From sequence record NC_070962.1: DNA of 64,000 nt; one strand, 5' to 3'. Below the pieces are notes generated by a model. That model was not told the DNA's origin. It saw only the letters and a program-made list of their open reading frames with translations, and made no database searches. The position numbers and the translations under genes are program-made. Below, piece by piece: positions 1 through 57,736 of this stretch. Numbering within the stretch: the first letter of the stretch is position 1; every line of letters starts with the position of its first letter.

Positions 1-531
1 ATGAGTATCACCGTCATTGATGATTTTATTCCACAAGATCTTTTCGATGAGATGATGGAGTTTATTCCTACAGATATTCCGTGGGAGTATGAAGATTTCT
101 CTGTCAATGAAGGTGATAATGTGCCCCAATTAGTTCATCTCTTTTATCACAATTATCGTCCACAATCTGAGTTTTTTGATGATATTTTGCCCGTATTACA
201 TTGTATTGATGACTTATACTGTATTGCAAAAGTGAAGGTCAATGGTACATTAAAAGGATGCAATTTAAAAGAAAAACCTTATCATATTGATGTAGAGAAT
301 ACTGATACAAATCCAGGACATATGTTCCCTGCTCCATCATTAAAAGTTTGCATCCTTATGTTAAACAATAACAATGGATATACACAGATTAAAGATAAGT
401 CAAGTGGAGTCACAAGACTGTTTAAAAGTAAAGCAAACAGAGCACTATTCTTTCCCAATACTTATGAACATATGGGAACAAATTGTACTGATCAAAACTT
501 AAGAATGACATTGAACATTGTGTATGCCTAA
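1..531 (+). CDS. 2OG-Fe(II) oxygenase-like protein
   Basis: HxD (PYHID), distal His (YEHMG) and R-x-x-L-N (RMTLNI) in the order expected for the double-stranded beta-helix fold. Starts at base 1, so the 5' end may lie outside the window. Confidence 0.7.
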   Translation: MSITVIDDFIPQDLFDEMMEFIPTDIPWEYEDFSVNEGDNVPQLVHLFYHNYRPQSEFFDDILPVLHCIDDLYCIAKVKVNGTLKGCNLKEKPYHIDVENTDTNPGHMFPAPSLKVCILMLNNNNGYTQIKDKSSGVTRLFKSKANRALFFPNTYEHMGTNCTDQNLRMTLNIVYA

Positions 532-749
532 TGAAAAAAGTTTGGAGATTATGGTGTAAAGCATTAGGAGAGAAAGCAACAAATAATGACATTGAATCAG
601 ATGTTGTTGCTATCATCCGAACTCTTATTCTTTTCTCTTATCTTATCACTAATTGCTTTATTATTGCAGGAGTTATTCGACATTATGACAATCAACAAAT
701 TCAGTGTGGTGTATCAACAGGAAAGGAAGAAAACAGGGTATTGGAGTAA
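531..749 (+). CDS. small hypothetical membrane protein (cyanophage-type WRLWCKALGEK family)
   Basis: 72-aa ORF whose start overlaps the upstream stop; hydrophobic segment VVAIIRTLILFSYLITNCFIIAGVI. Confidence 0.65.
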   Translation: MKKVWRLWCKALGEKATNNDIESDVVAIIRTLILFSYLITNCFIIAGVIRHYDNQQIQCGVSTGKEENRVLE

Positions 750-852
750 GCAAGAAGCAACATTCTTTGATGTGAGAGATGCTATGCTCTGGGAACGTCA
801 TGTAAAAGAATTAGGGTGCAAAAACGTTGAAATTGTACCAATTTTAGGTTAA
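685..852 (+). CDS. hypothetical protein (55 aa, MTINKFSVVYQQ...)
   Basis: ATG at 685 is in frame with track ORF 586..852. The upstream extension is Leu-rich shadow of the previous gene, so I moved the start. Confidence 0.5.
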   Translation: MTINKFSVVYQQERKKTGYWSKQEATFFDVRDAMLWERHVKELGCKNVEIVPILG

Positions 853-902
853 AATCAATTAAAAATGTATTTAAAAACATATATGAGTGTTTTCTAACAG
901 TC

Positions 903-923
903 TGTGGAAAAACCTGTGGAGAA
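903..923. promoter_or_regulatory. two tandem DnaA-box-like 9-mers
   Basis: TGTGGAAAA at 903-911 (reverse complement TTTTCCACA, a perfect box) and TGTGGAGAA at 915-923 (one mismatch), 12 bp apart and next to an AT-rich stretch at about 850-895. Confidence 0.45.
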
Positions 924-1025
924 CCTTGACAGTAACTGTATAGGGTCTTCAGAGTTACTTTGCAGTGATTTTATGCCTTCTTAAATGTCTTCTAAATGCC
1001 TAATCTTATTGTGATCTTGGCGTGC

Positions 1026-1054
1026 AGTCTATCAGGATTTCTCAGAAATGTCAA
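1026..1054 (-). promoter_or_regulatory. leftward sigma70-type promoter
   Basis: On the minus strand: TTGACA (1054-1049), 17-bp spacer, TAGACT (1031-1026). Confidence 0.6.
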
Positions 1055-1148
1055 CACCGAGAACAGAAAAATCTCAGAACCCTGACATAAATAACCAAAA
1101 TCTTTCTGAGAATTATACATAAGAATATCGCAACACTTCGTGGTATTC

Positions 1149-1177
1149 TTGACACACAACTCAGAATGGTTTATAAT
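1149..1177 (+). promoter_or_regulatory. consensus sigma70 promoter
   Basis: TTGACA (1149-1154), 17 bp, TATAAT (1172-1177), 29 bp upstream of the ATG at 1207. Confidence 0.85.
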
Positions 1178-1206
1178 AACTGAGCAGTCAAATCACCAGA
1201 AGAACA

Positions 1207-1374
1207 ATGCCTTACGCACAGAAATCCAAGTATCGCATCACTCTTGAGATTGAAGCAATGGATGACTTTAACCCGCATCAGATTGACTGGGAAAAGTTAT
1301 TTGAATTGCAGGGTGATGAGAAGGTCGAAACTTACATTGAAGACCTCTCCAGTAAGTATGATTCACTCTGGTGA
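1207..1374 (+). CDS. small hypothetical protein (55 aa, MPYAQKSKYRITLEIEAMDDFNPHQIDWEKLFELQGDE...)
   Basis: Translated by hand (below the track cutoff): ATG 1207 to TGA 1374, directly behind a perfect sigma70 promoter. Confidence 0.75.
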   Translation: MPYAQKSKYRITLEIEAMDDFNPHQIDWEKLFELQGDEKVETYIEDLSSKYDSLW

Positions 1375-1400
1375 TTATGTGAGGTAAGCATAGAGAATTT

Positions 1401-1457
1401 GTGCCAGTCGGTGAAGTGTCCACTATTGCCGCACAGGGCACCAAAATCGTGTATCTT
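1401..1457 (+). promoter_or_regulatory. probable cyanomyovirus early-type promoter (CCAGT...AAGTGTCCAC boxes plus -10 TATCTT)
   Basis: gtgCCAGTcggtgAAGTGTCCAC at 1401-1423 and TATCTT at 1452-1457. It resembles, from memory, the upstream element of early genes in T4-like cyanophages; not verified against an alignment. Confidence 0.5.
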
Positions 1458-1514
1458 ATAAGGGTGGAAGGGACAGCACCCGACCACAACACACAGTCTC
1501 TCAATTCTCTCATC

Positions 1515-1862
1515 ATGCGTAAGATCGAACAGCAAATGTGTGCCGCAGTTCAAAAGAACATCAACTGGCAATCTGCTAACACTGCTGTTACTTTTGACGA
1601 GGAATCTGGCATCTCTGCAGTGTTTCTCCACGGCAACAAAATTGCTGAGGTTTCTGATACCGACATGACAATCTTTGATGGTGGTTGGCAGTCCAACACT
1701 ACAAAGTCTCGTCTCAATGCACTTTGCCAAGAATTCTGCATTGCTGGTGAAGGTGTCTTTCAGAAAGATTTCCAGTGGTTTGTGAGAAAGTTTGTCGGCA
1801 AGATCGGTGACAAGGATATCTTCAAGAATGAAGAATTCGAGTCTGGTTTTGTTTTTGCCTGA
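1515..1862 (+). CDS. conserved cyanophage early-type hypothetical protein (MRKIEQQM...LHGNKIA...DGGWQSNTTKSRLNAL)
   Basis: ATG 1515 is in frame with the track ORF. The track's GTG start at 1401 falls inside the promoter element, so I moved the start. Confidence 0.75.
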   Translation: MRKIEQQMCAAVQKNINWQSANTAVTFDEESGISAVFLHGNKIAEVSDTDMTIFDGGWQSNTTKSRLNALCQEFCIAGEGVFQKDFQWFVRKFVGKIGDKDIFKNEEFESGFVFA

Positions 1863-1926
1863 TGCACAATTGACCTGGTGATGTCATTAAACTCACCAAC
1901 AGTTCCTAACACTTTTCTCTTTTATC

Positions 1927-2082
1927 ATGACCCGCAGCACTGCACTTGGAATGCTCAAAGTTGGCAACAACGGCAATGAGATTCTTCAGATTCTCGATGT
2001 GATTGTGAACGACATTGAGCAGGCAAACATTCAAGATTGTGCCGAACACTATGCTGCAATCAGTGCAGACTTTGAGTTCTGA
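1927..2082 (+). CDS. small hypothetical protein (51 aa, MTRSTALGMLKVGNNGNEILQILDVIV...)
   Basis: Translated by hand: ATG 1927 to TGA 2082, followed at once by a terminator. Confidence 0.7.
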   Translation: MTRSTALGMLKVGNNGNEILQILDVIVNDIEQANIQDCAEHYAAISADFEF

Positions 2083-2092
2083 GAATAACACT

Positions 2093-2120
2093 GAGGGCAG
2101 GTCATTCTGCCCTCTTTGAT
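2093..2120 (+). terminator. intrinsic terminator
   Basis: GAGGGCAG (2093-2100), loop GTCATT, CTGCCCTC (2107-2114), then TTTGAT (short U tract). Confidence 0.65.
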
Positions 2121-2346
2121 TATATCACAGTTTTATTCGTTCGTCAACAGCAGTTGTTGATATTATGGGGGTTCGTTATAAAAAAGCATTGGGAACCTAA
2201 CCTACAGAGGTGACAATTCGACCTCGATATAACACTTAGAAAAAAATTTTCCGAGGGTATAAACCGACCTCAGGAAGTCGCATATATAATTCGTCGATGG
2301 GTTTCATTGCCCGTCAAAAAATTTCGCAGAAAAAAATTGGTCCTAT

Positions 2347-2538
2347 ATGGAAAAACTATATCATATCTACGCAGGTAATCAATGTCTTTTTCCAAATATC
2401 AAGGAAGAGGAATTCAAGACTACGTGGAATACTGTAAAGGGTATGGTTGGTCTCATGCAGACGAACTATACTGAAGAAGACTTATCTTATGAGGAAGTCA
2501 TCATTAATCGTCAATTAATGCAAGAAGCATCATATTGA
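2347..2538 (+). CDS. small conserved hypothetical protein (63 aa)
   Basis: Clean ORF after the non-coding block; same AT-rich codon style as its neighbours. Confidence 0.7.
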   Translation: MEKLYHIYAGNQCLFPNIKEEEFKTTWNTVKGMVGLMQTNYTEEDLSYEEVIINRQLMQEASY

Positions 2539-2563
2539 CAAACAACACATACACTGATAGAAT
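2535..2563 (+). promoter_or_regulatory. sigma70 promoter with extended -10
   Basis: TTGACA (2535-2540), 17 bp, TAGAAT (2558-2563), with TG at 2555-2556. Confidence 0.8.
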
Positions 2564-2586
2564 TGATCTGAAGGTTATCTAAAACT

Positions 2587-3360
2587 ATGGCAAAAGGATT
2601 TACTGTTAAGGCAAATGCACCAAAGAAAAAGAGTGCAGATGCTGAGTTTGACATTGCAGCAATCAAAGAACGAATGAAGGGTAAGAAGATTGTCTTCTGT
2701 CTACCTGGACGTGGTTGCTCATTTACGTTTCTCAAAAACTTTGTACAACTGTGCTTTGATCTTGTACAAAATGGCATGAGTATCCAGATCAGTCAGGATT
2801 ACTCTTCCATGGTTAACTTTGCACGGTGTAAGGTACTTGGTGCAAATGTACTACGAGGTCCCAATCAGAAACCTTGGGACGGCAAACTAGAGTATGATTA
2901 TCAACTCTGGATTGATAGTGACATTGTATTCAACACTGATAAGTTCTGGCAACTCTGTGATAGTGCTATTGCTGCTGATGGTACAGAGAAGGAAGTAGTT
3001 GCTGGTTGGTATCTAACTGAAGATGGTAAGACTTCTTCTGTTGCACACTGGTTGGAAGAAGAAGACTTCCGTTCTAATGGTGGTGTGATGAATCACGAAA
3101 CCATTGAGACACTACCTAATCGTAAGAAACCATTCACAGTTGACTACACTGGTTTCGGATGGGTACTGATCAAGCACGGTGTATTTGAGAGTCTTGAGTA
3201 TCCCTGGTTTGCTCCTAAGATGCAAGTCTTTGAGTCTGGTGCAGTACAAGACATGTGTGGAGAAGACGTATCATTCTGTCTCGATGCGAAGGAAGCAGGA
3301 TTTGATATCTGGTGTGATCCTCGCATTCGTGTCGGTCATGAAAAGACACGGGTAATCTGA
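2587..3360 (+). CDS. GT-A fold (family 2-like) glycosyltransferase-like protein
   Basis: LWIDSDIVF (DxD), TGFGWVLIK, GEDVSFC and a C-terminal VGHEK: the usual motif order of GT-A enzymes. Confidence 0.65.
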   Translation: MAKGFTVKANAPKKKSADAEFDIAAIKERMKGKKIVFCLPGRGCSFTFLKNFVQLCFDLVQNGMSIQISQDYSSMVNFARCKVLGANVLRGPNQKPWDGKLEYDYQLWIDSDIVFNTDKFWQLCDSAIAADGTEKEVVAGWYLTEDGKTSSVAHWLEEEDFRSNGGVMNHETIETLPNRKKPFTVDYTGFGWVLIKHGVFESLEYPWFAPKMQVFESGAVQDMCGEDVSFCLDAKEAGFDIWCDPRIRVGHEKTRVI

Positions 3361-3515
3361 TGAACATCGACATCTATTATCAAGGTAATAAGATGTATTC
3401 TAATGTCACTCATGAGGAAGCAGCAGATATTCTTCATGAGTTAGCATTAGAGAGATATGAGGAAAAGAATGATATTGACTTAGATCAATTGGAAATTGTA
3501 CAACGTGTAGAATGA
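3360..3515 (+). CDS. small acidic hypothetical protein (51 aa, MNIDIYYQGNKMYSNVTHEEAADILHELA...)
   Basis: Translated by hand. Its start overlaps the upstream TGA and its stop overlaps the downstream ATG (ATGA), which suggests translational coupling. Confidence 0.7.
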   Translation: MNIDIYYQGNKMYSNVTHEEAADILHELALERYEEKNDIDLDQLEIVQRVE

Positions 3516-4678
3516 GAATTGCGATTATAGGCAAAGGTACTTCTGCGATTATTACTGCTCTACGTCTGATTCAAGATGATCATGACGTAGAGTTTTTTTA
3601 TGATCCAGATAAAAAACCTTTAAGTGTGGGTGAATCAACCACACCTCATATTCAGACATTAATCTTTGAATCTCTGGACATTACGATTGGAGATCTTGCA
3701 GATGCAGGTGTAATCTCTTACAAGAATGGAATCAAATATATTAACTGGGGAAGTGGTGAATCATTCCGTCACCATTTTCATGGAGGTGAAGTTGCTTTTC
3801 ACTTTGAGAGTGGGAAGTTAAATCCGTTCATTCACAATCACTTAGAGAAAGAACTTGGAATTGTTTATCATCCAGAGAGAGTTGATGGGTATGATATTGA
3901 GGATGACCAAGTTATAATTAATGACAAAGAGTATGACTTCGTAGTCAACTGTGCAGGGTGGGATGATGCATCCGAATATTATAAACCTATCTTTGAGACG
4001 GTAAACTCTGCGATCTTATATACCTCTGAGTCTATTGATGATCCGACTTATACTCTTCACCGCGCTACTCGGGATGGATGGGAATTTGGATTACCTTTTC
4101 CTGAACGAGGACTTACTAAGCACGGCTACCTCTACAACCGTAACTTCTCGGATCCAGATATACCTGGAAAGAAAATCGAATGGACTCCAAGATTCTCTAA
4201 GAAATTGCTTCAGAATCCTTTTGAAGCATACAATGGTAATCGACTTTTCTTTCTTGAACCACTAGAAGCATTATCATTATATTATTACAGTGAATTTGCA
4301 TCAACAATTGCTGAATTCTTAAAGACTAATCGAGATGAAAAATCATATCAAGAAGTGAATACACATTATCTTAAGAGTATGACTTGTTATACAAAATCAG
4401 TGTCATGGTTTTATTCTTATGGATCGATTTATGATTCACCATTTTGGAAGATAACACAAGCACGGGCAAATGTATATTTTAATTCTCAGTGCTTATCAAA
4501 TCGTCTAGATTCATTACTAGAAGCATATCATTCAAAATCAATAAACATTGGTTGTTTTGATTATCATGACTTTAAGGACGTTCATTGCGGAATGCTTCAG
4601 AGACCCATCCAGAAGGTCCTAGAAGGTGTGTTTAAATACCCACCAACCCCTTTACATATCCAGGATGATCTTGTATAA
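3512..4678 (+). CDS. flavin-dependent tryptophan-halogenase-like (PrnA family) protein
   Basis: N-terminal Rossmann motif IAIIGKGTSA, VGEST, SYKNGIKYINW (catalytic Lys region) and FLEPLEA (catalytic Glu region). WxWxIP is replaced by WEFGLP. Confidence 0.7.
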   Translation: MRIAIIGKGTSAIITALRLIQDDHDVEFFYDPDKKPLSVGESTTPHIQTLIFESLDITIGDLADAGVISYKNGIKYINWGSGESFRHHFHGGEVAFHFESGKLNPFIHNHLEKELGIVYHPERVDGYDIEDDQVIINDKEYDFVVNCAGWDDASEYYKPIFETVNSAILYTSESIDDPTYTLHRATRDGWEFGLPFPERGLTKHGYLYNRNFSDPDIPGKKIEWTPRFSKKLLQNPFEAYNGNRLFFLEPLEALSLYYYSEFASTIAEFLKTNRDEKSYQEVNTHYLKSMTCYTKSVSWFYSYGSIYDSPFWKITQARANVYFNSQCLSNRLDSLLEAYHSKSINIGCFDYHDFKDVHCGMLQRPIQKVLEGVFKYPPTPLHIQDDLV

Positions 4679-4679
4679 T
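4651..4679 (+). promoter_or_regulatory. sigma70 promoter
   Basis: TTTACA (4651-4656), 17 bp, TATAAT (4674-4679). Confidence 0.7.
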
Positions 4680-4704
4680 ATAGAGGTAAACACAACGGAG
4701 TTAC

Positions 4705-4854
4705 ATGGCAGTACGTTCAAAGATCGGTCTATCAGGTGTTAATTTTATGCCTGGCAAACCCAAGAAGACACGTCAGGGTTGTAGTCAGCACACCAAACTT
4801 GCAGCATCCTCACGTAATGGCAAAAAGAAACGTTATCGTGGACAAGGACGGTGA
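4705..4854 (+). CDS. small highly basic protein (49 aa, ...KPKKTRQG...KKKRYRGQGR)
   Basis: Translated by hand; GGAG ribosome-binding site just upstream. Confidence 0.75.
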   Translation: MAVRSKIGLSGVNFMPGKPKKTRQGCSQHTKLAASSRNGKKKRYRGQGR

Positions 4855-4887
4855 TTAAATAGTAAAGAAATACTTAAAGGTATAACT

Positions 4888-4983
4888 ATGCGTTGGATTC
4901 ACAAAGGTGGCAAATCAAAACCAGATAAAAGGTGTAAAAATGTCTTTACACCCAAAAAATCATGTAAGAAGAAAAAACGTTAA
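4888..4983 (+). CDS. very small Lys-rich protein (31 aa, MRWIHKGGKSKPDKRCKNVFTPKKSCKKKKR)
   Basis: Translated by hand; preceded by TAAATA at 4856-4861 and an AAGG-type RBS. Confidence 0.5.
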   Translation: MRWIHKGGKSKPDKRCKNVFTPKKSCKKKKR

Positions 4984-5021
4984 ATTGTGAGGTTAAATAG
5001 AACAGATCTTAACTGTTCTTA

Positions 5022-5735
5022 ATGCCAGCACTTATATGTAATCTTCCATCAACGGAAGTATGGGTTAGAAAAGAATATCTCACAGATCATCAGTTTGGTC
5101 ATGGTGAGTTTGTCAAGGGCGTTTGGGTATCGTGTAAATCGATACCTGGACGTGCTTTTTATTTTGAGACATATTTGCCCGAATATGCAGCAATGTATGA
5201 TAAATTGCCGATTAGTGCCTTTTTATCAAAACCAAAGACTCCAGATCCTGATATGAATCTTCCAAATCTTCAATTTTGGAACTGTATGGACTATGGAGTA
5301 GTAGCAGTTCAGAAGCAATTCATCGGTTCTATGGACTATGAACTGTATACAAGAGATTTTGGCATTCAAAAAGGCACTTATGTTTGCACTTTAGACAATT
5401 ATCATCAAGATCCTGACGTAATTGACTATGCAACAAGTGAAAATCCTGCCGAACATAAGTCACATAACCTCATTGAACTTGAAAATGGGCAGTATGCACT
5501 GTATCCAAACAACAGAATTCGTATTTTTGACAATAGTTTGACTCCAGAAGAGCCAAAAATGCCCGATTTTAAGGTTTCAACCGTAGAATATCAAGTTGAA
5601 AATGGTTTTGAACGTCTTGGAATGGGTCGAGAGGAAGAATATTTTTGGAAAACTGCTCAAGAACGCAAAAAAGAAGAAGAAAATCCCGAAGAAATGTATA
5701 AATCGCAAGAAGGAAGGTTTTTAGATCCGCAATAA
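5022..5735 (+). CDS. conserved cyanophage hypothetical protein upstream of gp25
   Basis: 237-aa ORF with late-promoter core TAAATA at 4994-4999. Confidence 0.8.
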   Translation: MPALICNLPSTEVWVRKEYLTDHQFGHGEFVKGVWVSCKSIPGRAFYFETYLPEYAAMYDKLPISAFLSKPKTPDPDMNLPNLQFWNCMDYGVVAVQKQFIGSMDYELYTRDFGIQKGTYVCTLDNYHQDPDVIDYATSENPAEHKSHNLIELENGQYALYPNNRIRIFDNSLTPEEPKMPDFKVSTVEYQVENGFERLGMGREEEYFWKTAQERKKEEENPEEMYKSQEGRFLDPQ

Positions 5736-5740
5736 TCGTC

Positions 5741-5746
5741 TAAATA
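5741..5746 (+). promoter_or_regulatory. T4-type late promoter core
   Basis: TAAATA about 30 bp upstream of the gp25 start. Confidence 0.55.
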
Positions 5747-5775
5747 GGTTGATAATACCTATTTTGCGTGTACTG

Positions 5776-6177
5776 ATGCCTGTAGAAAGGATAAGTAGAG
5801 GGTTTAAAGACCTAAGTATGACGTTTAATTCAAATCCTCTTACTGAGGATTTAATAACTTTAAAGAATGATGTTGCAATTGCAAGGTCAGTTCGCAATCT
5901 AGTGATGACATATACTGGAGAACGTTTCTTTCAACCAAATCTTGGTTCTCAAGTATCCCGTTTGTTATTTGAACCTATGTCACCAATTGTAAGTGATCAG
6001 ATAAAGGATGAAATAACACGAACAATTACAACATATGAACCAAGAGTTGAATTGCAGCAGGTTATATGTCAACCAAGATATGATGAAAACGATTATGCAG
6101 TAACTGTTAAATATAAGATAATTGGACTTGATTTAGCACCAACAGAACTTTCATTCTTACTACAACCAACGAGATAA
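5776..6177 (+). CDS. gp25: baseplate wedge subunit gp25
   Basis: FKDLS...NPLT.DL...KND.AI.RSVRNL..T..GERFFQPNLGS and YEPRV motifs. Start moved to the ATG at 5776. Confidence 0.92.
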   Translation: MPVERISRGFKDLSMTFNSNPLTEDLITLKNDVAIARSVRNLVMTYTGERFFQPNLGSQVSRLLFEPMSPIVSDQIKDEITRTITTYEPRVELQQVICQPRYDENDYAVTVKYKIIGLDLAPTELSFLLQPTR

Positions 6178-8124
6178 ATGGCAATTACTAAATTTACAAG
6201 TCTGGACTTTGAACAGATAAAAGAAACTTTAAAGTCATATCTACGTTCCAACTCAACGTTTACTGATTATGACTTTGAAGGATCTACTTTATCCACAGTC
6301 ATAGATCTTCTTGCATATAACACATATATTGCTGCATATAATGCAAATATGTTAAGCAATGAAGTTTTCATCGATGGTGCTACTCTTAGAGAAAATGTAG
6401 TCTCTTTAGCAAGAAATGTTGGTTATTTACCAAGGACAAAAACTTCTGCTAAGGCAAACATTAGTTTTTTTGTTGATACTTCCGACTTATCATCTGCACC
6501 TCGTTCTATTACCTTAAATAAAGGATCTGTAGCGATTAATAGAACGAATAATACAAACACAAGTAAAACTTTTTGTATTCCAGAAGCAGTAACTGCCACA
6601 GTATTTCAAAATTCAGCAACTTTTGATAATGTTACAATATATGAGGGTTCATTGATTGAATCAACATTTACTGTAGATTCAAATCAAACGAATCAAAGAT
6701 ATATTTTAGATAACGTTGGAATAGATTATTCAACAATTAGAGTTACTGTAAAAGATGATTTCTTTTCAGATGATTTTGTTGTTTATAGGATGGCATCATC
6801 TATTTCGGAATTAACACCAACCTCAAAAGTATTTTTTATACAGGAAATTGAAGATGAACGATATGAATTAATTTTTGGTGATGGCGTATTTGGAAATAAA
6901 TTGCAAGATAATAATTTAATTACAGTTTCGTATATTGTTACTAATGGTGAGGATGGAAATGGTCCATCTAATTTTACATTTTTAGGAAGTTTAGTTGATA
7001 ATAATGGTAACGTTATTGCTAGAAACGTTTCCGAAATTTCTGTATTAAGTCCTGCTACTGGTGGTGCAGATATTGAATCTGTTCAATCAATTAAAAATTA
7101 TGCTGGAAGAACATATGCCTCTCAAGGTAGAGCAGTAACTTCTAATGATTACGAAACAATTGTTAGGAGAGTATATCCAGAAACCGATTCTATTAATGCA
7201 TTTGGGGGAGAAGAACTTGATCCACCAAGATACGGTAGAGTTTTTATTACCATTAAACCTAAAACTGGTTTATATGTATCAAATGCTCTTAAAGATAGTA
7301 TAAAAAGAGAACTTAGAAAATACTCTGTAGCAGGAATTGTCCCAGAAATTTTAGATACTAAATTTCTATTTGTTGAGTGTAAGACTAATGTTTATTATAA
7401 TCCATCTTTGACGAAATCATCTGAAAATGTCAATCAAGCAGTTAGTTTAACTTTAACTAAATTTGCTGCTTCTGAAGAGATGAATATGTATGGATCTAGG
7501 TTTAGATATACTCAATTTACATCTTTAATTGATAAGTCTGATAGGTCGATTACATCAAATATCACAGAAATAAGAATTCGTCGTGATATGAGAGCAGTCG
7601 TCAATAGATTAGCAGAATATGAGGTTTGCTTCGGAAATTCATTCAAAATGTTGGATAGAACTGGTTACAATATAAAATCTTCTGGTTTTTCTGTAGCTGG
7701 AATAAATGGTCTTGTATATTTTTCAGATATTCCTAGTTCAGATAACATGGGTGAATTAGTTCTTATACAAGTACCAGATGCAATTGAATTGCCATATGGT
7801 GGAACAGAAGATCAACCAAAACCATCAGCAACTATAGTAAGAAGAAATGTTGGGAATATTGATTATGCTAAAGGTGAAATTAATATTAGTGCAATAAATA
7901 TAACATCTACTGAGATTCCACTAAATTCAACTATTGAAATATCGGCAACTCCACTTTCAAACGATGTAATTGGATTACAAGATTTGTTCCTTCAATTTGA
8001 TACTGGATCATCTGGTATAAATGTTATTGAGGACAATATTTTGTCTGGTTCAGATCCTACTGGATCTAGATTTATTGTAACACCGACTAATTATAGTAAC
8101 TCAGTTATTCGACCAAGATCCTAA
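6178..8124 (+). CDS. gp6: baseplate wedge subunit gp6
   Basis: LDFEQIK..LKSYL...TFTDYDFEGS, A.LRENVVSLARN.GY.P, QGRAVT.NDY; follows gp25. Confidence 0.93.
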   Translation: MAITKFTSLDFEQIKETLKSYLRSNSTFTDYDFEGSTLSTVIDLLAYNTYIAAYNANMLSNEVFIDGATLRENVVSLARNVGYLPRTKTSAKANISFFVDTSDLSSAPRSITLNKGSVAINRTNNTNTSKTFCIPEAVTATVFQNSATFDNVTIYEGSLIESTFTVDSNQTNQRYILDNVGIDYSTIRVTVKDDFFSDDFVVYRMASSISELTPTSKVFFIQEIEDERYELIFGDGVFGNKLQDNNLITVSYIVTNGEDGNGPSNFTFLGSLVDNNGNVIARNVSEISVLSPATGGADIESVQSIKNYAGRTYASQGRAVTSNDYETIVRRVYPETDSINAFGGEELDPPRYGRVFITIKPKTGLYVSNALKDSIKRELRKYSVAGIVPEILDTKFLFVECKTNVYYNPSLTKSSENVNQAVSLTLTKFAASEEMNMYGSRFRYTQFTSLIDKSDRSITSNITEIRIRRDMRAVVNRLAEYEVCFGNSFKMLDRTGYNIKSSGFSVAGINGLVYFSDIPSSDNMGELVLIQVPDAIELPYGGTEDQPKPSATIVRRNVGNIDYAKGEINISAINITSTEIPLNSTIEISATPLSNDVIGLQDLFLQFDTGSSGINVIEDNILSGSDPTGSRFIVTPTNYSNSVIRPRS

Positions 8125-8136
8125 CTTAGATATAAA

Positions 8137-11100
8137 ATGGATATAAGCAGAATCCGTCTATCTCAAATTCTGGAAAGTCAAATTCCAGATTTTATTAATG
8201 ACGAATTTCCTTTGTTTAAGGATTTTTTACGTCAATATTTTGAAGCAAATGAAATTGCAGGAGGATCTTACGATCTTCTTTCAAATATTGACAAGTATGT
8301 CAATTTAAATACATTAACTCTTACTCCACGAGATACTAGATCTACCGAAGATTTTGAATATGATGATACCACTCTGACGGTAGAATCTACTTATGGATTT
8401 CCTAATAAGTATGGACTTTTAAGACTAAATCCATCTTTTGATGGAGAAAGATATTATGGTGGTGAAATTGTAACTTACACATCAAAAACTGATACTGAGT
8501 TTAAAGGAATTGTTAGGAATTTTAGTGGAATAACAGAAGTTGGTGATGAAGTAGTATTCTCAGATTCTGTTATTGATGAGAGCAGCAATTTTTATTACAA
8601 TGGAACTTTTGTTCAGAATTTAAGTTCTGTATTTTTAGTCGAATTTTTAAATAAATTAAAATCTCAAATTGCTCCTGGTTTTGAAAATAGAACTTTAAAT
8701 TACAATGTTAACGATAGATTATTTTTATCCAGAACAAGTGATTTTTATAAAACAAAAGGAACTGCTGAAGGATTTAGAATTCTATTCAGAGTATTATATA
8801 ATGAGCCCGTTGATGTAATTATTCCGTCAACAAATATTTTTGAATCATCTGCATCATCTAATAGAAAAACTAGAGATTTAGTTCTTTATGTAGATGATCA
8901 AGAAACTGATTATACAGATCTAATTTTACATAGAACTATTAAACAACCTACAGATAGTATAGATGAATCATCTGATTTATCTGCATATGGAACTATCACT
9001 AATGTTGAGAAAATTGAAAGAAATGGTGTAATATATTATGTTGTAAGTTTAGATAGTGATTATGATAAAGATATTTCAGTATCAGGAACAGTTTTTGGTG
9101 AATTTGTACCAACACCAACAACTAAAGTAACCGAAGACTTTAAACTAAATCTAGATGGTTCTTATCCAGAATTTTTAAATGTAGATTCTACTATAGGATT
9201 TGATGATGCATCTTCTTTAGATGTATATAATATTATTAATGGTGAAACTTTTGTTAATACAATATCATATAATTTAAGAACCTCCACAGAATTTTATGGA
9301 GTAACATCGGAGGTTGCAATTCCTAGAGGAACACTTCTTTCATCTAGGAGATATGCCTTTGTTGAATTTGATAATAGGACTGTATATTTCAGAGTAACTG
9401 GAATTTTAAGTCAAATTATTCCAGATAAAAGTTCTTATTTCTCAGAAGGAGATCCTATTAAGTTTAATAGTGTAGGATTAAAAGAAGACACTAAAAAATA
9501 TAATGATTGGACTTTTAATTGCAATCCGACGTATAATATTTCAAATTTAGAACTGCAAGATTCCATTAATAGAAGATATAAATTCAATCTAGATGGAAAT
9601 TATGATTTATCTCTATTTGACAAATTTTTCCTGATAGATAACAACAATAATTCTTATAACGTTATAATTTCTGCTAGAGAAAGTCTTTCAGAATATGTCA
9701 TAACGTCAAATAGTATCATTGATTTATCAGCAAGAAGTTTTACTATTGAGAGAAAATTAAATAAAGCAAATTTTGACTTTTTCCCAGAAGCAAATAATTT
9801 TGTAACAGATGTACAAAATGTTTGGAGACCGATTGATTATAATGATGAACTATTTGTAGCATCATCTTCTTTACCCAATTATAGAAATGAAAACTTAACC
9901 ACCAATGACAAAAGAATTACATTTAGTGCTAATATTCCATCAGACAGGTCAACAAATAAAGAGTTAAAAATCGGTCAAGACGCTACAGCACAAATACCAG
10001 AAAAAACTCATTCTTTCTATACTGGTGATTCCATAATATACAGTGAGGATGATGATGATGAGGAAAATACTAATAGACTTAGTATACCAAATGGAAGATA
10101 TTATGTAACTGTTGTTGATAATAAAACAATTAAACTGTCTACTAGTTTAAACAGAGTTTACACTAAAGAATATGTTTCAATAACTGGAAATGTTACTGAT
10201 AATACTTTTTATTATTCAGATTTCTTTGACATTGAAAAAGTATTAAACATTGAGGAACCATTCGTTTTAAAATCTAAAAGATGTATAAAAAGAATTTTAC
10301 CTCCTATCGATCAATCAACCAATGAAACAACAAAACCAGGTAAAATTGGTATATTTAAAAACGGTGTAGAACTTTTAAACTATAAATCAAAAAACAATAT
10401 TTTCTACGGTGGACTTGAGTCAATTGAAGTTTTATCTAGTGGAGACGGTTATGACATTATTAATCCACCATCATTAGATATTTTTGATGGAAGCAACGCT
10501 GATGGTTTAAACAATGGTGGAATTGGAGCTACTGGTAATTTTGTAGTACAAGGTTCAGTTGTAGATATAAAAATATTAGGTGGTGGATATAATTACACAG
10601 AAACTCCAACAGTTAACGTATCTGGAGGTAATGGTAAAGGATGCGTTATTGAACCAGTAATGGAAACTTACACTCATGGTGTGACTATTGACGCATCAAG
10701 TGGATTTAATGTAGGTATTTCATCAAATACTATTATATCATTAGAAGATCATTTATTTTCACCAGGTGAAAAGATTCTCTATAACTGTGAGTTAAATAAT
10801 CAAGAAATTGGTGGATTAAAAAATAAAGCAATTTATTTTGTTGGAGTTGTAGATAATACTTCATTCACATTACACAAATCAATCGTTGATGCTAAAAACA
10901 ACTTAAATCCAATTGATATTACTGAATTTGGAGAAGGTAATCACAAATTTGATTCGGTTAAAAAGAAAAAAAGAATTGGATCGTTAAATGTTACATATTC
11001 TTCTGATGATTTTACATATAGAAAAGTTTCATACGATCCTTCTGTTGTTTCAACCCCTATTGACTACTATACCAATGCAATTACTATTCCATCACATGGA

Positions 11101-14100
11101 TTTAATAATGGTGAAATAGTAATATATGAATCATCAACAACAGAAATTTCTGGACTGTCCAGTGGCACATCATATTATGTTACAAAGGTGGATAATGATT
11201 CATTTAAATTATCTTCTTTAGGTATTGGCACACTACCAAAAAATCATTACTATAATGAAAAAACATTTGTAGAAATGACGACACCTGGTGTTGGTAGACA
11301 ATATTTTAGATATCCCAATATCGAAGTAAATATTACACCTTCTGGTCAGGATGTTTCTTCAGTCGAACCTCAAGTTTTACCAATTGTTAGAGGTCAAATT
11401 AAAGAAGTATTTTTGGAATCTAATGGTGTTGGATATGGATGTACTAATATCTTTAACTATGAGAGACAACCACAAATAACAGCAGAACCTGGAAAATTAG
11501 CTTCGGCAAAACCATTCATTGTTGATGGTGAAATTAAAGGTGTAATCATTCAAAACTCTGGACAGAAATATGTTTCTACACCATCTGTACAAATTTTTAC
11601 TGACGGTGAAGGTGGATTTGGTGCAGATTTAATTCCAATTGTAGACAACGATGGTAGACTTTCAGACGTTCTTGTAAAAAATGGTGGAGCTGATTATAAC
11701 GATGCTACAGAGATTGAAATTGTATCTGCTGGATCTGGAGCAAAATTTAAAGCAAAAATTTATAATTGGAATGTAAATGAAGTAGAAAGAGCACTTAACA
11801 GTAATCAGATATATGATGATGATGGATTCTTACACCAAGATTCAACAATACCAATAGAAGATGCTGAAGATCATGGTTTACTACAATATACGCATTGTTA
11901 TGCACCAAGAAAACTGAGACAAACAATATACAATAAAAAAGTAGTAAATGGAAGAACTACATTCAATCCAGATCTTATCTTAGATAGATTGGGTAGAGAA
12001 ATTAATTCTACCTCACACTCACCAATTTTGGGATGGGCATATGATGGAAATCCTATCTATGGTCCATATGGATATACCAATAGAGACGGAAGTGGTGGTG
12101 TTAAACTCATGCAAAGTGGGTATAGAAAGAGAACTTTAACAAATAGACCATCTGTAACTGTTTATCCTTTAGGATTCTTCTGCAATGACTATGAATGGTT
12201 TAGTGATGGTGATTTGGATGAATTTAATGGAAGGTTCTGTGTAACTCCAGATTATCCAAATGGCACATATGCTTATTTTGCTACTGTTGGTGATAATGAT
12301 TCCATATTTAAAAATTATAAACTACCAACATTTCCATATGTTATTGGTGATAAATTTAAATCAAAACCAATTGAATTTAATTTCGTTTCTAGATTAAATC
12401 AAGATACATTTTTCTCCGATCTTCTTGGGGACGACATTCCATATAATTATATCAATTATAATTTAATCAGAAATGTTACTCCCCATAATTTAGCAGGTGT
12501 AGATGGCAAATATAACTATATTTTTGATCCTTCTCAGTATATAACTGTTGATTCAAAAGTTAAATCTGTTACTTCTGGATCTGTTGACAATGTGATTATT
12601 TTTGAAGGTGGTAAAGATTTTAAAGTTGGTGATAGAATTATTTTTGCTGATAGTGGGGAGGGAACAACAAGACCAGTTGCAAAAGTTGCAAGTATTGGTG
12701 GAACGGATGCAACGTCTGTTTCTGTGGCAGTTTCTTCATTTAATAATGCAGAACTAGTTCCAAGTCCAAGCACTGGTGGTGTAGTTGCAATTTGCAGTTA
12801 TCCACATAATTCATACACTGGTCCAGGAAAAATTAATGATTTAAATAATCAAAGTTATTTTTCTGATGAACTTATTGTATATAATAGAGATTTAAAGATT
12901 GCAGGATTTGGAACGGATAATATTGTTATAGATTTACCATCTGTTACTGGAATTGTAACATATATTAATGTATTTGGACTCGAATCTACACAAAATATTA
13001 TACCAGTTTTACCAAATGATATTTTTAAAATTGAATATGGATTATTTAATGAGGAAGTTAAAGTATTAAATATTGATTTTAAAAATTCTAGACTTAGAGT
13101 TCAAAGAGAGGTTAATGGAACTATTGGAACTAGTTATCCAGTAGGTACAGCACTGTCAGAAGATCCTAGAAAATTTATCATCAAGAATGAGTCTCCAAGC
13201 GATTCTTCAAATAGATTCAATACTCAGTTGTATTTTAATCCAAAAGAAAGTGTTGGTGTTGGAATTGGAACAACTCTATCAATATCAAATCCAGGAGCAG
13301 GGAGCACTCAAATATTCGTTGCTGGTGATAGAATATATCTACCAAATAATACATTAAGAGTTAACGATAAAATCTATTATGAATATGATAATGGACCAAT
13401 TACAGTAGAGTCTTTTGGAGATAATTTCAATCTTCAAAAAGATAGACCATATTATGCATATCCTTTCCCAAATGGTTATATTGGAATTTCTTCTAGACCA
13501 GTTGGTGTTGGATCAACAGGACCAGTAGGTGTTGGAAGTATCACCGAACTTTTATCTTTCACAGGTTTTGGAGCTGGTGATAATCATAGTTTTTATACAA
13601 GATATAATGATGTACATGCTGTTGATATTACCACTTTTGAAGTTACAGTCAATACTTCAAAAAACCATAATCTTGTATTTGATGATCCAATAACTGTTAC
13701 ATGCGAACCTAATATTGAAAAAACATTAGAAGTTTTTTATAATCAAGAAAATGCTAAATTTGCAGTAGGAAAATTTGATTTTGTACATGCAGACATCAAT
13801 CCAAAATTTAATACAATTACCCTTACTAATCACGGTTTAGACAATGGGCAAAAATTGATTTTGGAATCAACTGCACCTCCTGGTGGTATGGTTAATAATG
13901 GTGTTTATGTTGTTGGTGTTGTAAATGAAAATACAATTAAATTATACCACACAAATAATGGTGGTGTGGTTAATATCGTAAACCAATCAACTGGTAGATT
14001 ATTGGTCGTTAACCCACAATTAAATCTAATTAGAAATAAGACTTTAAAGTTTGATTTATCTGACTTTAGTCTTTCTTATGTTAGAAATAATATTAGATAT

Positions 14101-57298: not shown

Positions 57299-57736
57299 AT
57301 GACATTTGACATTAGTATGATTAAATCGATGTGGGAAAAAGATTCTCAAATCGATATGGATAATTTGCATCAGGAGTCAATAAACATTCCTGTTTTGCAT
57401 TCTAAATACTATGACATTTACAATAATCTGCTTCTCCTAAAAGCAAAGGCAGAGCAGCAAAGAAAAAATGTCAGACACGAAAGATATGAATATTATTCTG
57501 GTAAAGCAGATCCCGATGTTTATCAGAAAGATCCTTTTCCTAAAAAAGTAAGAGATAAAGATGCTATGAACAAGTATCTTGATGCTGATAAGAAACTATC
57601 TACTATCAGTATGAAGATCGAATATTATCAGGTAATGATCAACTATGTTGATAGTATTCTTAAACAAATATCTAATCGAACATACCAAATAAAAAACTCA
57701 ATTGAATTTTTGAAATTCCAAGCTGGATATGGCTAA
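57299..57736 (+). CDS. uvsY: recombination mediator UvsY
   Basis: WEKDSQID...IPVLHSKY...YEYYSGKA...NRTYQIKNSIEFLKFQAG; upstream of uvsW. Confidence 0.9.
   Translation: MTFDISMIKSMWEKDSQIDMDNLHQESINIPVLHSKYYDIYNNLLLLKAKAEQQRKNVRHERYEYYSGKADPDVYQKDPFPKKVRDKDAMNKYLDADKKLSTISMKIEYYQVMINYVDSILKQISNRTYQIKNSIEFLKFQAGYG

What the first reader, a model, noticed from the sequence alone, without database searches (positions are those of the whole stretch)
850..1054. Origin-like locus: AT-rich stretch, two cyanobacterial-type DnaA boxes and an ORF-less leftward promoter
Seen: an AT-rich run (about 850-895), TGTGGAAAA (903-911) and TGTGGAGAA (915-923) 12 bp apart, and a minus-strand TTGACA-17-TAGACT promoter (1054-1026). 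That promoter fires towards the boxes, against the direction of nearly every gene in the window, and no credible ORF follows it. Known: TTTTCCACA is the box described for cyanobacterial DnaA, and T4 origins are primed by promoter-made RNA that forms an R-loop removed by UvsW, which is encoded in this window. Inference: a hybrid origin (RNA primer plus host DnaA), or a decoy that titrates host DnaA.
Basis: partly seen in the sequence, partly recalled or inferred. Interest (0 to 1): 0.7.

Follow-up and report, generated by a model that had tools for sequence, protein, structure and literature searches.

The report
Conserved cyanophage non-coding module with DnaA boxes
The gene-free gap at 853-1206 of this marine cyanophage (S-SCSM1) holds a single-copy control region conserved across T4-like cyanophages, built from an easily melted AT-rich element, a backward-pointing promoter and, in about half of the phages, a tandem pair of binding sites for the host replication initiator DnaA; it is the best candidate yet for where these abundant viruses start or regulate DNA replication, but that function is not shown.

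Summary
The window is Synechococcus phage S-SCSM1, positions 1-64000.

Within this genome the boxes are barely significant. The perfect cyanobacterial box TGTGGAAAA occurs once in 228.8 kb, box-like 9-mers are at background, and a close pair arises in 9% of shuffles.

Comparison with relatives changes the picture. The gap is a single-copy module shared by at least 183 distinct cyanomyovirus sequences:
- an AT element (861-884);
- a variable cassette;
- 'block c' (1011-1058), which on the minus strand reads TTGACA-17-TGnTAnnnT;
- rightward promoters.

Box clusters next to the AT element are about 60 times enriched. They are all-or-none: about 49% of variants have none and 49% have two or more. 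Their preferred gaps of 2-3 bp are the geometry DnaA prefers, and a real cyanobacterial dnaA-dnaN origin carries the same pair with the same ACC spacer.

So the boxes are real but optional. The core is the promoter plus the AT element.

A T4-type promoter-plus-unwinding-element origin, with host DnaA as accessory, is the most likely reading (about 0.4). Nothing functional is shown:
- GC skew is uninformative;
- the RNA data are unstranded and come from mixed strains;
- there are no DnaA-trios.

The main rival is a DnaA-responsive transcription switch.

The parts
853..897 (.). AT-rich element; conserved core AAAAATGTATTTAAAAACATATAT at 861-884. Candidate DNA unwinding element.
   Evidence: Read. 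Single copy in the genome. Conserved in all aligned relatives. Among the 0.1-0.2% least stable 30-50-nt windows of the genome, one of about 45 such regions.
902..925 (+). Tandem double DnaA box: CTGTGGAAAAAC (9-mer 903-911, perfect cyanobacterial consensus) and CTGTGGAGAACC (9-mer 915-923, one mismatch), with a 3-bp gap (ACC).
   Evidence: The same geometry and spacer stand in the cyanobacterial dnaA-dnaN spacer L362 4508-4528. Box clusters are 60-fold enriched at this locus across relatives, and the gaps peak at 3 and 2 bp.
931..958 (.). Inverted repeat AGTAACT ... AGTTACT (7-bp arms, 14-nt loop). AGTTACT-type repeats recur in relatives.
   Evidence: Read. Related AGTTACT/AGATACT repeats appear in the variable cassette of other loci. 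Function unknown.
980..1000 (+). Two TTAAATG-type repeats (CTTAAATGTC at 980-989, TCTAAATGCC at 991-1000). Relatives carry 1-4 copies just left of block c.
   Evidence: the TAAATG column is conserved in the alignment.
1011..1058 (-). Block c, a conserved minus-strand sigma-70-type promoter: -35 TTGACA (1054-1049), 17-nt spacer, extended -10 TG (1034-1033), -10 TAGACT (1031-1026). Predicted start near 1019. The conserved initial sequence is AGATCAC (1017-1011, minus strand).
   Evidence: Single nhmmer hit in the whole genome, E = 4e-20. In 11 of 11 long-form loci fetched independently of this block, TTG(A/C)C(A/T), a 17-nt spacer and TGnTAnnnT are kept while the inner bases vary.
1059..1148 (+). 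Conserved leader with TCTCAGAA/TTCTGAGA repeats and a late-promoter-like CATAAATA (1086-1093).
   Evidence: D6, I7, I8. Conserved with S-8S53 and L241/L086. RNA contigs start at 1060, 1064 and 1095 (with caveats).
1149..1177 (+). Perfect consensus rightward early promoter TTGACA-17-TATAAT in front of SSCSM1_4 (1207-1374).
   Evidence: 12 of 12 matches. It is one of many perfect consensus promoters on the + strand. RNA depth is highest over 1241-1360.

Best explanation
The gap 853-1206 is a single-copy cis-acting module, conserved across T4-like cyanophages, that most likely marks the site where early, origin-dependent phage DNA replication starts.

Proposed sequence of events:
1. Host RNA polymerase fires leftward from the extended -10 promoter in block c (start near 1019), against the direction of all neighbouring genes.
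2. It transcribes non-coding DNA through short repeats and the double DnaA box into the AT-rich element at 861-884.
3. As at T4 ori(uvsY) and ori(34), transcription into an easily melted element opens the duplex or leaves an RNA-DNA hybrid. This can prime synthesis and let the phage helicase loader and helicase enter.
4. In S-SCSM1, and in about half of its relatives, a host-type tandem DnaA box beside the AT element recruits host DnaA. DnaA would act as an accessory that helps melting, anchors the site or gates the promoter. It is not the essential initiator.

Shown: the sequence elements, their single-copy status, their conservation and geometry, and the absence of any coding or structured-RNA alternative.
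Inferred: promoter activity, DnaA binding, unwinding, priming and origin function.
For: Conservation and context:
- The module lies in a gene-free gap of 270-1000 bp at a syntenic place in S-8S53/55, S-SCSM2R, S-CAM1/3/4, Bellamy, DSL-LC03, S-PM2, S-RSM4, Syn1, S-MbCM7, S-H38 and others.
- Block c and the AT core each occur once in the 228.8-kb genome.

Promoter signature in the long form:
- The -35, the 17-nt spacer length, TG, and the TA...T positions are invariant, while the inner -10 bases and the spacer sequence vary.

No alternative product downstream:
- No conserved ORF, no Rfam match, no fold signal (z = -0.10) and no tRNA.
- The genes to the left differ between phages, so an antisense target is not conserved.

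The boxes:
- 1.35-1.43 per 300 nt upstream of block c, against 0.023 elsewhere in the same contigs.
- The count is bimodal, zero or at least two.
- Gaps peak at 3 and 2 bp, then at 11-13 bp.
- This matches DnaA's preferred double box (PMC11317965) and a real cyanobacterial oriC pair with the same ACC spacer.
- TTTTCCACA is the cyanobacterial box and is EMSA-verified (PMC4674748).

Other support:
- The AT element is within 20 nt of the boxes and among the 0.1-0.2% least stable windows.
- UvsW, UvsY, primase, helicase and a gp59-like loader are annotated.
- A single origin has been predicted for the cyanomyovirus Syn9 (PMC2984593, citing Weigele 2007).
Against: - No functional datum exists.
- GC skew is positive everywhere and the cumulative curve is monotonic, so it marks no origin.
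- RNA contigs show only low depth over 881-1060. They are unstranded and come from several strains.
- About 49% of homologous loci have no DnaA box.
- No DnaA-trio run flanks the boxes.
- In the short form of block c (S-PM2, Syn1, S-RSM4, S-CAM1 types) the hexamer at the -10 position is TAAG(A/C)C. It lacks the normally essential final T, so promoter function there is doubtful.
- In S-SCSM1 the AT element lies 120-165 nt from the predicted start, farther than at the T4 origins.
- About 45 other regions of the genome are equally easy to melt.
- T4-type phages replicate mostly by recombination, and T4's own origins are not conserved among its relatives (general knowledge).
Confidence: 0.4

Rival explanations
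1. DnaA-responsive transcription switch. The module is the regulatory region of the early operon that starts at 1149-1207. The leftward promoter insulates or interferes with transcription from the upstream operon, or makes a short-lived antisense RNA. DnaA bound to the double box acts as a roadblock or regulator that couples early phage expression to the host's replication or ATP-DnaA state. No replication starts here.
For: - In E. coli, double DnaA boxes outside oriC are mostly transcriptional sites (PMC11317965).
- The module always sits directly upstream of rightward early-type promoters and small early-type genes.
- The boxes are optional and are replaced by other repeats or palindromes in box-less relatives, as expected for interchangeable operator sites.
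- The short form carries a further palindrome (TGTGACA..TGTCACA) between block c and the rightward promoter.
Against: - The boxes lie about 240 nt from the rightward promoter and about 95 nt downstream of the leftward start, which is unusual for an operator.
- There is no conserved antisense target.
- This reading does not explain the strongly conserved, easily melted AT element next to the boxes.
Confidence: 0.3
2. DnaA sink or tether. The boxes serve only to bind host DnaA. They would either titrate it away from the host origin as phage genomes multiply, or hold the phage DNA at membrane-bound DnaA, as proposed for the injection-stop region of T5-like phages.
For: - T5-like phages carry conserved pairs of DnaA boxes 3 bp apart in a non-coding region that is not their origin (bioRxiv 10.1101/866236).
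- The pair geometry here is the same.
- Box clusters also occur in many unrelated phage contigs.
Against: - Two or three boxes per genome make a weak sink.
- Half of the relatives lack boxes.
- T4-like genomes are circularly permuted, so there is no fixed first-injected end (general knowledge).
- This reading leaves the conserved promoter and AT element unexplained.
Confidence: 0.1
3. The CTGTGGA repeats are bound by some other protein, phage or host, and only resemble DnaA boxes. Alternatively they are neutral hitch-hikers in a recombination-prone cassette.
For: - The unit conserved here is CTGTGGA plus a variable tail: the second box is GAA, TAA, ATA or GTA in relatives.
- The cassette is highly variable.
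- The genome-wide frequency of box-like 9-mers is at background.
Against: - There is a perfect 9-mer match to the cyanobacterial consensus in the first box.
- The geometry and spacer are identical to a real oriC.
- The gap distribution matches what DnaA is known to prefer.
- The all-or-none box count argues for selection on clusters.
Confidence: 0.12
4. The leftward promoter drives a functional small RNA or small protein gene.
For: - There is a conserved promoter with a conserved initial transcribed sequence, AGAUCACAAG.
- A 32-aa minus-strand ORF starts inside the AT element.
Against: - No fold signal (z = -0.10).
- No terminator-like site on the minus strand before 331-314.
- No Rfam match.
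- ORFs are not conserved in length or sequence.
- The transcribed cassette is the most variable part of the locus.
Confidence: 0.05

Closest known systems
T4 replication origins ori(uvsY)/oriF and ori(34)/oriG (promoter plus downstream DNA unwinding element, R-loop primer, UvsW-sensitive)
   Same: - A promoter reads into an AT-rich, easily melted element with no need for a protein product.
- The phage family has the same replisome, with UvsW, UvsY and a gp59-type loader annotated.
- The element is short and intergenic.
   Different: - The promoter here is a host sigma-70 extended -10 type, not a MotA-dependent middle promoter (cyanophages lack MotA/AsiA, from general knowledge).
- The element is single-copy and conserved across genera, whereas T4 has several poorly conserved origins.
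- Host DnaA boxes are present, which T4 origins lack.
- The AT element is 120-165 nt from the start in this phage.
- R-loop formation is untested.
Bacterial oriC of cyanobacteria (dnaA-dnaN spacer with TTTTCCACA boxes)
   Same: - Same 9-mer, same tandem arrangement and even the same ACC spacer as in L362.
- An AT-rich stretch lies next to the boxes.
   Different: - Only two boxes here (0-5 in relatives).
- No DnaA-trio array.
- No dnaA or dnaN neighbour.
- The boxes are dispensable in half of the homologous loci.
DnaA-box pairs in the injection-stop (iss) region of T5-like phages (bioRxiv 10.1101/866236)
   Same: - A lytic phage with a conserved, large non-coding region containing repeats and palindromes.
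- DnaA boxes occur in pairs separated by 3 bp.
- The function there is also only inferred.
   Different: - T5 has eight boxes in inverted-repeat blocks within a terminal repeat that enters first.
- The cyanomyovirus module has 0-5 boxes, a conserved promoter and an AT element.
- It sits in a circularly permuted genome type.
E. coli 'double DnaA box' regulatory sites (PMC11317965) and DnaA-stimulated transcription at lambda pR
   Same: - Two boxes in tandem, 2-3 bp apart, one strong and one weaker.
- They are located near promoters.
   Different: - No evidence here that the boxes affect either promoter.
- Their distances from the promoters are atypical.
Plasmid and prophage origins that combine DnaA boxes with initiator iterons (P1 oriR, pSC101, F)
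   Same: Host DnaA boxes serve as an accessory beside an AT-rich region and short repeats.
   Different: No Rep-type initiator gene is recognisable next to the locus. The neighbours are PHROG families of unknown function and Kyano_Gp96.

Membership tests
DnaA-box cluster (host DnaA binding site) | 9-mer matching the host-lineage consensus TTTTCCACA | tested here: met
   903-911 is a perfect match and 915-923 has one mismatch. Consensus from PMC4674748.
DnaA-box cluster (host DnaA binding site) | Two boxes in tandem, 2-3 bp apart (double box) | tested here: met
   The gap here is 3 bp. Across 164 independently fetched variants the gaps peak at 3 bp (32) and 2 bp (11). The rule comes from PMC11317965. 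The same arrangement stands in the real oriC L362.
DnaA-box cluster (host DnaA binding site) | Physical binding by DnaA | not testable with these tools
   Needs EMSA, footprinting or ChIP with Synechococcus DnaA.
Bacterial-type DnaA-dependent origin (basal unwinding system, PMC8287927) | DnaA-trio array: at least 3 NAN repeats starting within 16 bp of a box | tested here: not met
   The longest run on any flank or strand is 2, at or below the null median for this window.
Bacterial-type DnaA-dependent origin (basal unwinding system, PMC8287927) | AT-rich unwinding region adjacent to the boxes | tested here: met
   861-884 lies about 20 nt from box 1 and is among the 0.1-0.2% least stable windows, though about 45 regions qualify.
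Bacterial-type DnaA-dependent origin (basal unwinding system, PMC8287927) | The boxes are indispensable and conserved in homologous origins | tested here: not met
   49% of 164 homologous loci have no box.
T4-type R-loop origin (oriF/oriG) | Promoter whose transcript needs no coding function | tested here: met
   The promoter signature is conserved in the long form. No ORF, Rfam family or fold signal lies downstream. This is sequence level only, and the -10 in the short form is non-canonical.
T4-type R-loop origin (oriF/oriG) | DNA unwinding element downstream of that promoter | tested here: inconclusive
   The AT element is downstream on the minus strand. It lies 120-165 nt away here and about 25-45 nt away in short-form relatives.
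T4-type R-loop origin (oriF/oriG) | Persistent RNA-DNA hybrid that primes leading-strand synthesis; replication bubbles at the site | not testable with these tools
   Needs DRIP or S9.6 mapping, 2D gels, or early marker-frequency sequencing. The only read-laying run gave unstranded contigs from mixed strains.
T4-type R-loop origin (oriF/oriG) | Phage encodes UvsW and a gp59-type loader | tested here: met
   From the record's annotation only: UvsW at 57729-59192, UvsY at 57299-57736, and a helicase loader at 155637-156224.
Replication origin in general | Strand-composition switch (GC skew) at the site | tested here: not met
   The skew is positive in every 8-kb bin and the cumulative curve is monotonic. 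The test has little power because nearly all genes lie on one strand.
Iteron/Rep-type origin (P1 oriR-like) | Adjacent initiator (Rep) gene | tested here: not met
   The flanking ORFs match only PHROGs of unknown function and Pfam Kyano_Gp96.

The most novel reading that the evidence does not exclude
T4-like cyanophages share one conserved, modular replication origin. Its fixed core is a host-RNA-polymerase promoter firing into an AT-rich unwinding element. Next to the core sits a swappable cassette that recruits different DNA-binding helpers. In about half of the lineages the helper is the host initiator DnaA, bound at an oriC-like double box. In the rest, other repeats or palindromes (TTCTCAATAAG..CTTATTGAGAA, TACTGTGAAG repeats) would recruit other factors. 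That would make phage replication start depend on, or sense, the host's own initiation machinery.
Probability: 0.25. Interest if true: 0.8.

Novelty: new variant of a known kind. Interest (0 to 1): 0.62.

Why it matters
Cyanomyoviruses are among the most abundant viruses in the ocean. How they start DNA replication is essentially unknown: the accessible literature offers only a skew-based prediction of a single origin for Syn9.

- It is a single-copy non-coding module present in cultured model phages (S-PM2, Syn1, S-RSM4, the S-CAM series, S-SCSM1) and in hundreds of environmental contigs.
- It has precise coordinates for a promoter, an unwinding-prone element and host-type DnaA sites.
- It offers a natural experiment, because closely related loci exist with and without DnaA boxes.

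If DnaA is used, phage replication would be tied to the host cell-cycle machinery. That bears on light/dark and nutrient control of infection.

If the module is instead a transcription switch, it is still a conserved early control region that current annotations leave blank. No paper on DnaA boxes in cyanomyoviruses was found in the searchable library.

Tried and rejected
1. GC and AT skew on the reassembled 228.8-kb genome. The curve is monotonic and uninformative because nearly all genes are on one strand.
2. Rfam at gathering thresholds on the window and at E <= 1 on 600-1500. Nothing real was found.
3. RNA fold of the predicted leftward transcript. It folds no better than shuffles.
4. A minus-strand small ORF starting in the AT element. 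It is not conserved.
5. tRNA genes. The S-PM2 record AJ630128 annotates tRNAs over the homologous element, but ARAGORN finds none there or in window 1-12000, so those features are misplaced.
6. DnaA-trio search. Not met.
7. A second copy in the genome. The weak nhmmer hit at 209,118-209,158 is only an ordinary rightward promoter with an upstream TGTCACAG motif.
8. RNA evidence.
   - I first read the depth jump at 1060-1095 as a transcript boundary.
   - The contigs left and right of it have different mismatch patterns, so they come from different strains.
   - Unitigs also break at the edges of the conserved block c. The boundary may therefore be an assembly artefact, and I do not use it as evidence.
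9. The genome-contig scan for the box pair.
   - One true cyanobacterial oriC (L362) was usable.
10. Finding the element in Syn9 by BLAST from three different queries. It was not detected.
11. The Weigele 2007, Doron 2016 and Mann 2005 papers are not held. Whether the Syn9 predicted origin or its mapped start sites coincide with this module could not be checked.
12. The AT element as a T4-type late promoter. Some relatives have TATAAAT(G/A) there, but S-SCSM1 does not, so this was rejected as the conserved function.

Full report
**Identity and setting.** The window is positions 1-64000 of Synechococcus phage S-SCSM1 (MK867354.2, 228,827 bp, Kyanoviridae, host WH7803). The finding lies in the gene-free gap 853-1206. 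This gap separates SSCSM1_3 (685-852) from SSCSM1_4 (1207-1374), both on the + strand, as are nearly all genes of this phage. Both neighbours and the next genes are real conserved phage genes of unknown function (PHROG matches). SSCSM1_5 is Pfam Kyano_Gp96.

**The observation.**
- The AT-rich run spans 853-897, with its core at 861-884.
- TGTGGAAAA is at 903-911 and TGTGGAGAA at 915-923. These are tandem copies of a 12-nt unit CTGTGGA(A/G)AA(C)C with a 3-bp gap.
- The minus-strand promoter is TTGACA (1054-1049), 17 nt, TAGACT (1031-1026). It also has an extended -10 TG at 1034-1033.
- A perfect rightward consensus promoter (1149-1177) precedes SSCSM1_4.

Taken alone, the boxes are not significant.
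- Box-like 9-mers occur at background in the window and in the whole genome (19 against 23.7 expected).
- The perfect box occurs exactly once in 228.8 kb.
- The single close pair would appear in 9% of shuffled genomes.

**What relatives show.** Sensitive BLAST of the gap found weak matches that all fall in unannotated, gene-free gaps of other cyanomyoviruses. A query from S-CAM1 extended this to S-CAM3/4, S-PM2, S-RSM4, S-RIM32/44, Syn1, the ACG-2014 phages, S-WAM2, S-H38 and others. S-8S53 led to S-PRM1 and S-CAM9.

The gaps measure 270-1000 bp. They follow runs of small genes that often include a 2OG-Fe(II) oxygenase, and they precede small early-type genes, including homologues of SSCSM1_5.

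The alignments define the parts of the module:
- an AT element (AAATG(T/G)(A/T)TTAAAAA(A/C)ATA...);
- a variable cassette;
- 1-4 TTAAATG-type repeats;
- 'block c' (GTGATCT..GC..GCA...TA.CA ... GAAATGTCAA);
- a conserved leader;
- rightward promoters.

Block c and the AT core are each single-copy in the S-SCSM1 genome.

**Are the boxes real?** I took 164 variants that were not fetched with the box pattern.
- 49% have no box within 300 nt upstream of block c, 2% have one, and 49% have two to five. The mean is 1.35, against 0.023 per 300 nt elsewhere in the same contigs.
- The all-or-none distribution argues for selection on clusters.
- Gaps between same-orientation neighbours peak at 3 bp (32 cases) and 2 bp (11), then at 11-13 bp (23), which is about two helical turns.
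- Two or three bp is the spacing that E. coli DnaA requires at its 'double boxes' (PMC11317965). It is also the spacing of the box pairs in T5-like phages (bioRxiv 10.1101/866236).
- TTTTCCACA is the cyanobacterial box and has been verified by EMSA (PMC4674748).
- One hit of the genome scan, L362, is a true cyanobacterial origin. The spacer between a DnaA gene and a DnaN gene (Pfam) carries C-TGTGGAAAA-ACC-TGTGGAAAA, the same arrangement and spacer as window 902-923.

I conclude that these are host-type DnaA sites. They form an optional cassette and are not the core of the locus.

Box-less variants carry other repeats or palindromes in the same place, such as TTCTCAATAAG..CTTATTGAGAA and TACTGTGAAG repeats. 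In this sample the palindromes never occur together with boxes (0 of 80 against 14 of 84, p = 7e-5).

**Block c as a promoter.** Eleven long-form loci were fetched independently of block c, by BLAST or by the box pattern. In all eleven the minus strand reads TTG(A/C)C(A/T), exactly 17 nt, TGn, TAnnnT. The inner -10 bases vary (GAC, AAC, GCG, TAC, GTC, CAA, CAC) and so does the spacer sequence. This is the conservation pattern of a working extended -10 promoter.

The short form (S-PM2, Syn1, S-RSM4, S-CAM1/4 and Prochlorococcus-phage-like contigs) lacks about 11 nt of the spacer. As a result TAAG(A/C)C stands at the -10 position, often with TG but without the final T. I cannot explain this, and it weakens the promoter reading for that form.

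**What lies downstream of the promoter.**
- No conserved ORF.
- No Rfam family.
- No fold signal (z = -0.10).
- No tRNA.
- No terminator-like site before 331-314.
- The genes further left differ between phages, so there is no conserved antisense target.

**Tests of origin function.**
- GC skew is positive in every bin and the cumulative curve is monotonic, so it is uninformative.
- The AT element is among the 0.1-0.2% least stable 30-50-nt windows, but about 45 regions share that property.
- No DnaA-trio run flanks the boxes. Together with the dispensability of the boxes, this excludes membership in the bacterial basal-unwinding type of origin.
Depth is low over 881-1060 and high from 1060-1095 rightwards, peaking over SSCSM1_4.
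- However, the contigs on the two sides differ in their mismatch patterns, so they come from different strains. Unitigs would also break at the conserved block c. I therefore treat the apparent boundary as possibly artefactual.
- I take from these data only that no abundant RNA covering the boxes was seen.

**Interpretation.** The data best fit a conserved cis-acting element whose product is the act of transcription or the DNA site itself. The closest functional model is the T4 ori(uvsY)/ori(34) design, in which a promoter fires into an unwinding element. Here it would be built with a host sigma-70 promoter, and in half of the lineages it would be decorated with an oriC-like double DnaA box next to the AT element. 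I give this 0.4.

The rivals are:
- a DnaA-responsive transcription switch for the early region (0.3);
- a DnaA sink or tether in the manner proposed for T5 (0.1);
- a different binding protein or no function for the boxes (0.12);
- a small RNA or peptide gene (0.05).

**Novelty.** Phage non-coding regions with host DnaA boxes are known (P1 oriR, lambda, T5 iss), and so are promoter-plus-unwinding-element origins (T4). A single conserved module across cyanomyoviruses that combines the two, with an interchangeable cassette, was not found in the searchable literature. The key older papers could not be read. I rate it a new variant of a known kind, with interest 0.62.

Noticed in passing
window 2093-2346: A second gene-free stretch. 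It holds a strong two-way terminator-like hairpin (2093-2114), a near-consensus minus-strand promoter TTGACG-17-TATAAT with TG (2147-2119) that fires straight into that hairpin, and repeated CGACCTC motifs with TATAA-rich late-promoter-like sites before SSCSM1_7.
   Followed up: no
window 1086-1093: CATAAATA, a T4-type late-promoter-like motif, lies in the conserved leader between block c and the early promoter. One RNA contig starts at 1095. SSCSM1_4 may therefore have both early and late promoters.
   Followed up: partly
window 36304, 41177, 41471: Single N letters stand in the window sequence, inside the long tail fibre and tail fibre genes. They were seen while computing duplex stability.
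   Followed up: no
L007 (DSL-LC03) 1890-1965: This freshwater cyanomyovirus has, besides three boxes at the module, a second dense cluster of five TTTTCCACA/TGTGGAAAA boxes about 350 nt further on in the same 600-nt gene-free gap.
   Followed up: partly
L002 (S-8S53) 1680-1980: The 1-kb gene-free gap of the S-8S53 and S-8S55 phages continues, after the module, with a G+C-rich array of CCTGCGCG-type repeats interspersed with TATA-rich stretches. Its nature is unknown.
   Followed up: no
L014, L018, L019, L106, L112, L122 (IMG/VR sample 3300045988, contigs of 42-43 kb, G+C 0.54-0.58): These are unrelated phage contigs with 5-8 mixed TGTGGAAAA/TGTGGATAA boxes, many as double boxes, close to one contig end. 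L109, L116, L120, L121, L017, L021 and L026 also carry dense box arrays. DnaA-box clusters seem widespread in phage contigs.
   Followed up: no
L124 (S-PM2, AJ630128.1 19177-19333): The record annotates tRNA-Asn and tRNA-Leu, and further tRNAs inside CDSs, over the homologous module. ARAGORN finds no tRNA in the 3.1-kb locus, so these features look misplaced in that record.
   Followed up: yes
box-less homologues, e.g. L125 (S-RSM4) 1470-1510, L258, L344, L349: Where DnaA boxes are absent, a 10-bp-arm palindrome TTCTCAATAAG..CTTATTGAGAATCAAT or 2-3 direct repeats of (A/G)TACTGTGAAG occupy the cassette. These are possible sites for another DNA-binding protein.
   Followed up: partly
S-SCSM1 genome 76139-76180 and 209134-209175 (outside the window); short-form loci downstream of block c: A motif AACTG(G/T)CACA stands 5-6 nt upstream of some TTGAC -35 elements. 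It also appears as TGTGACA..(A)AGTGGCACA between block c and the rightward promoter in short-form loci. It may be an upstream promoter element or an activator site.
   Followed up: partly
window 1401-1862: The open frame of SSCSM1_5 extends upstream to a GTG at 1401 (153 aa), while the record starts it at 1515. The Pfam Kyano_Gp96 match covers the annotated 115 aa completely, so the annotated start seems right.
   Followed up: partly
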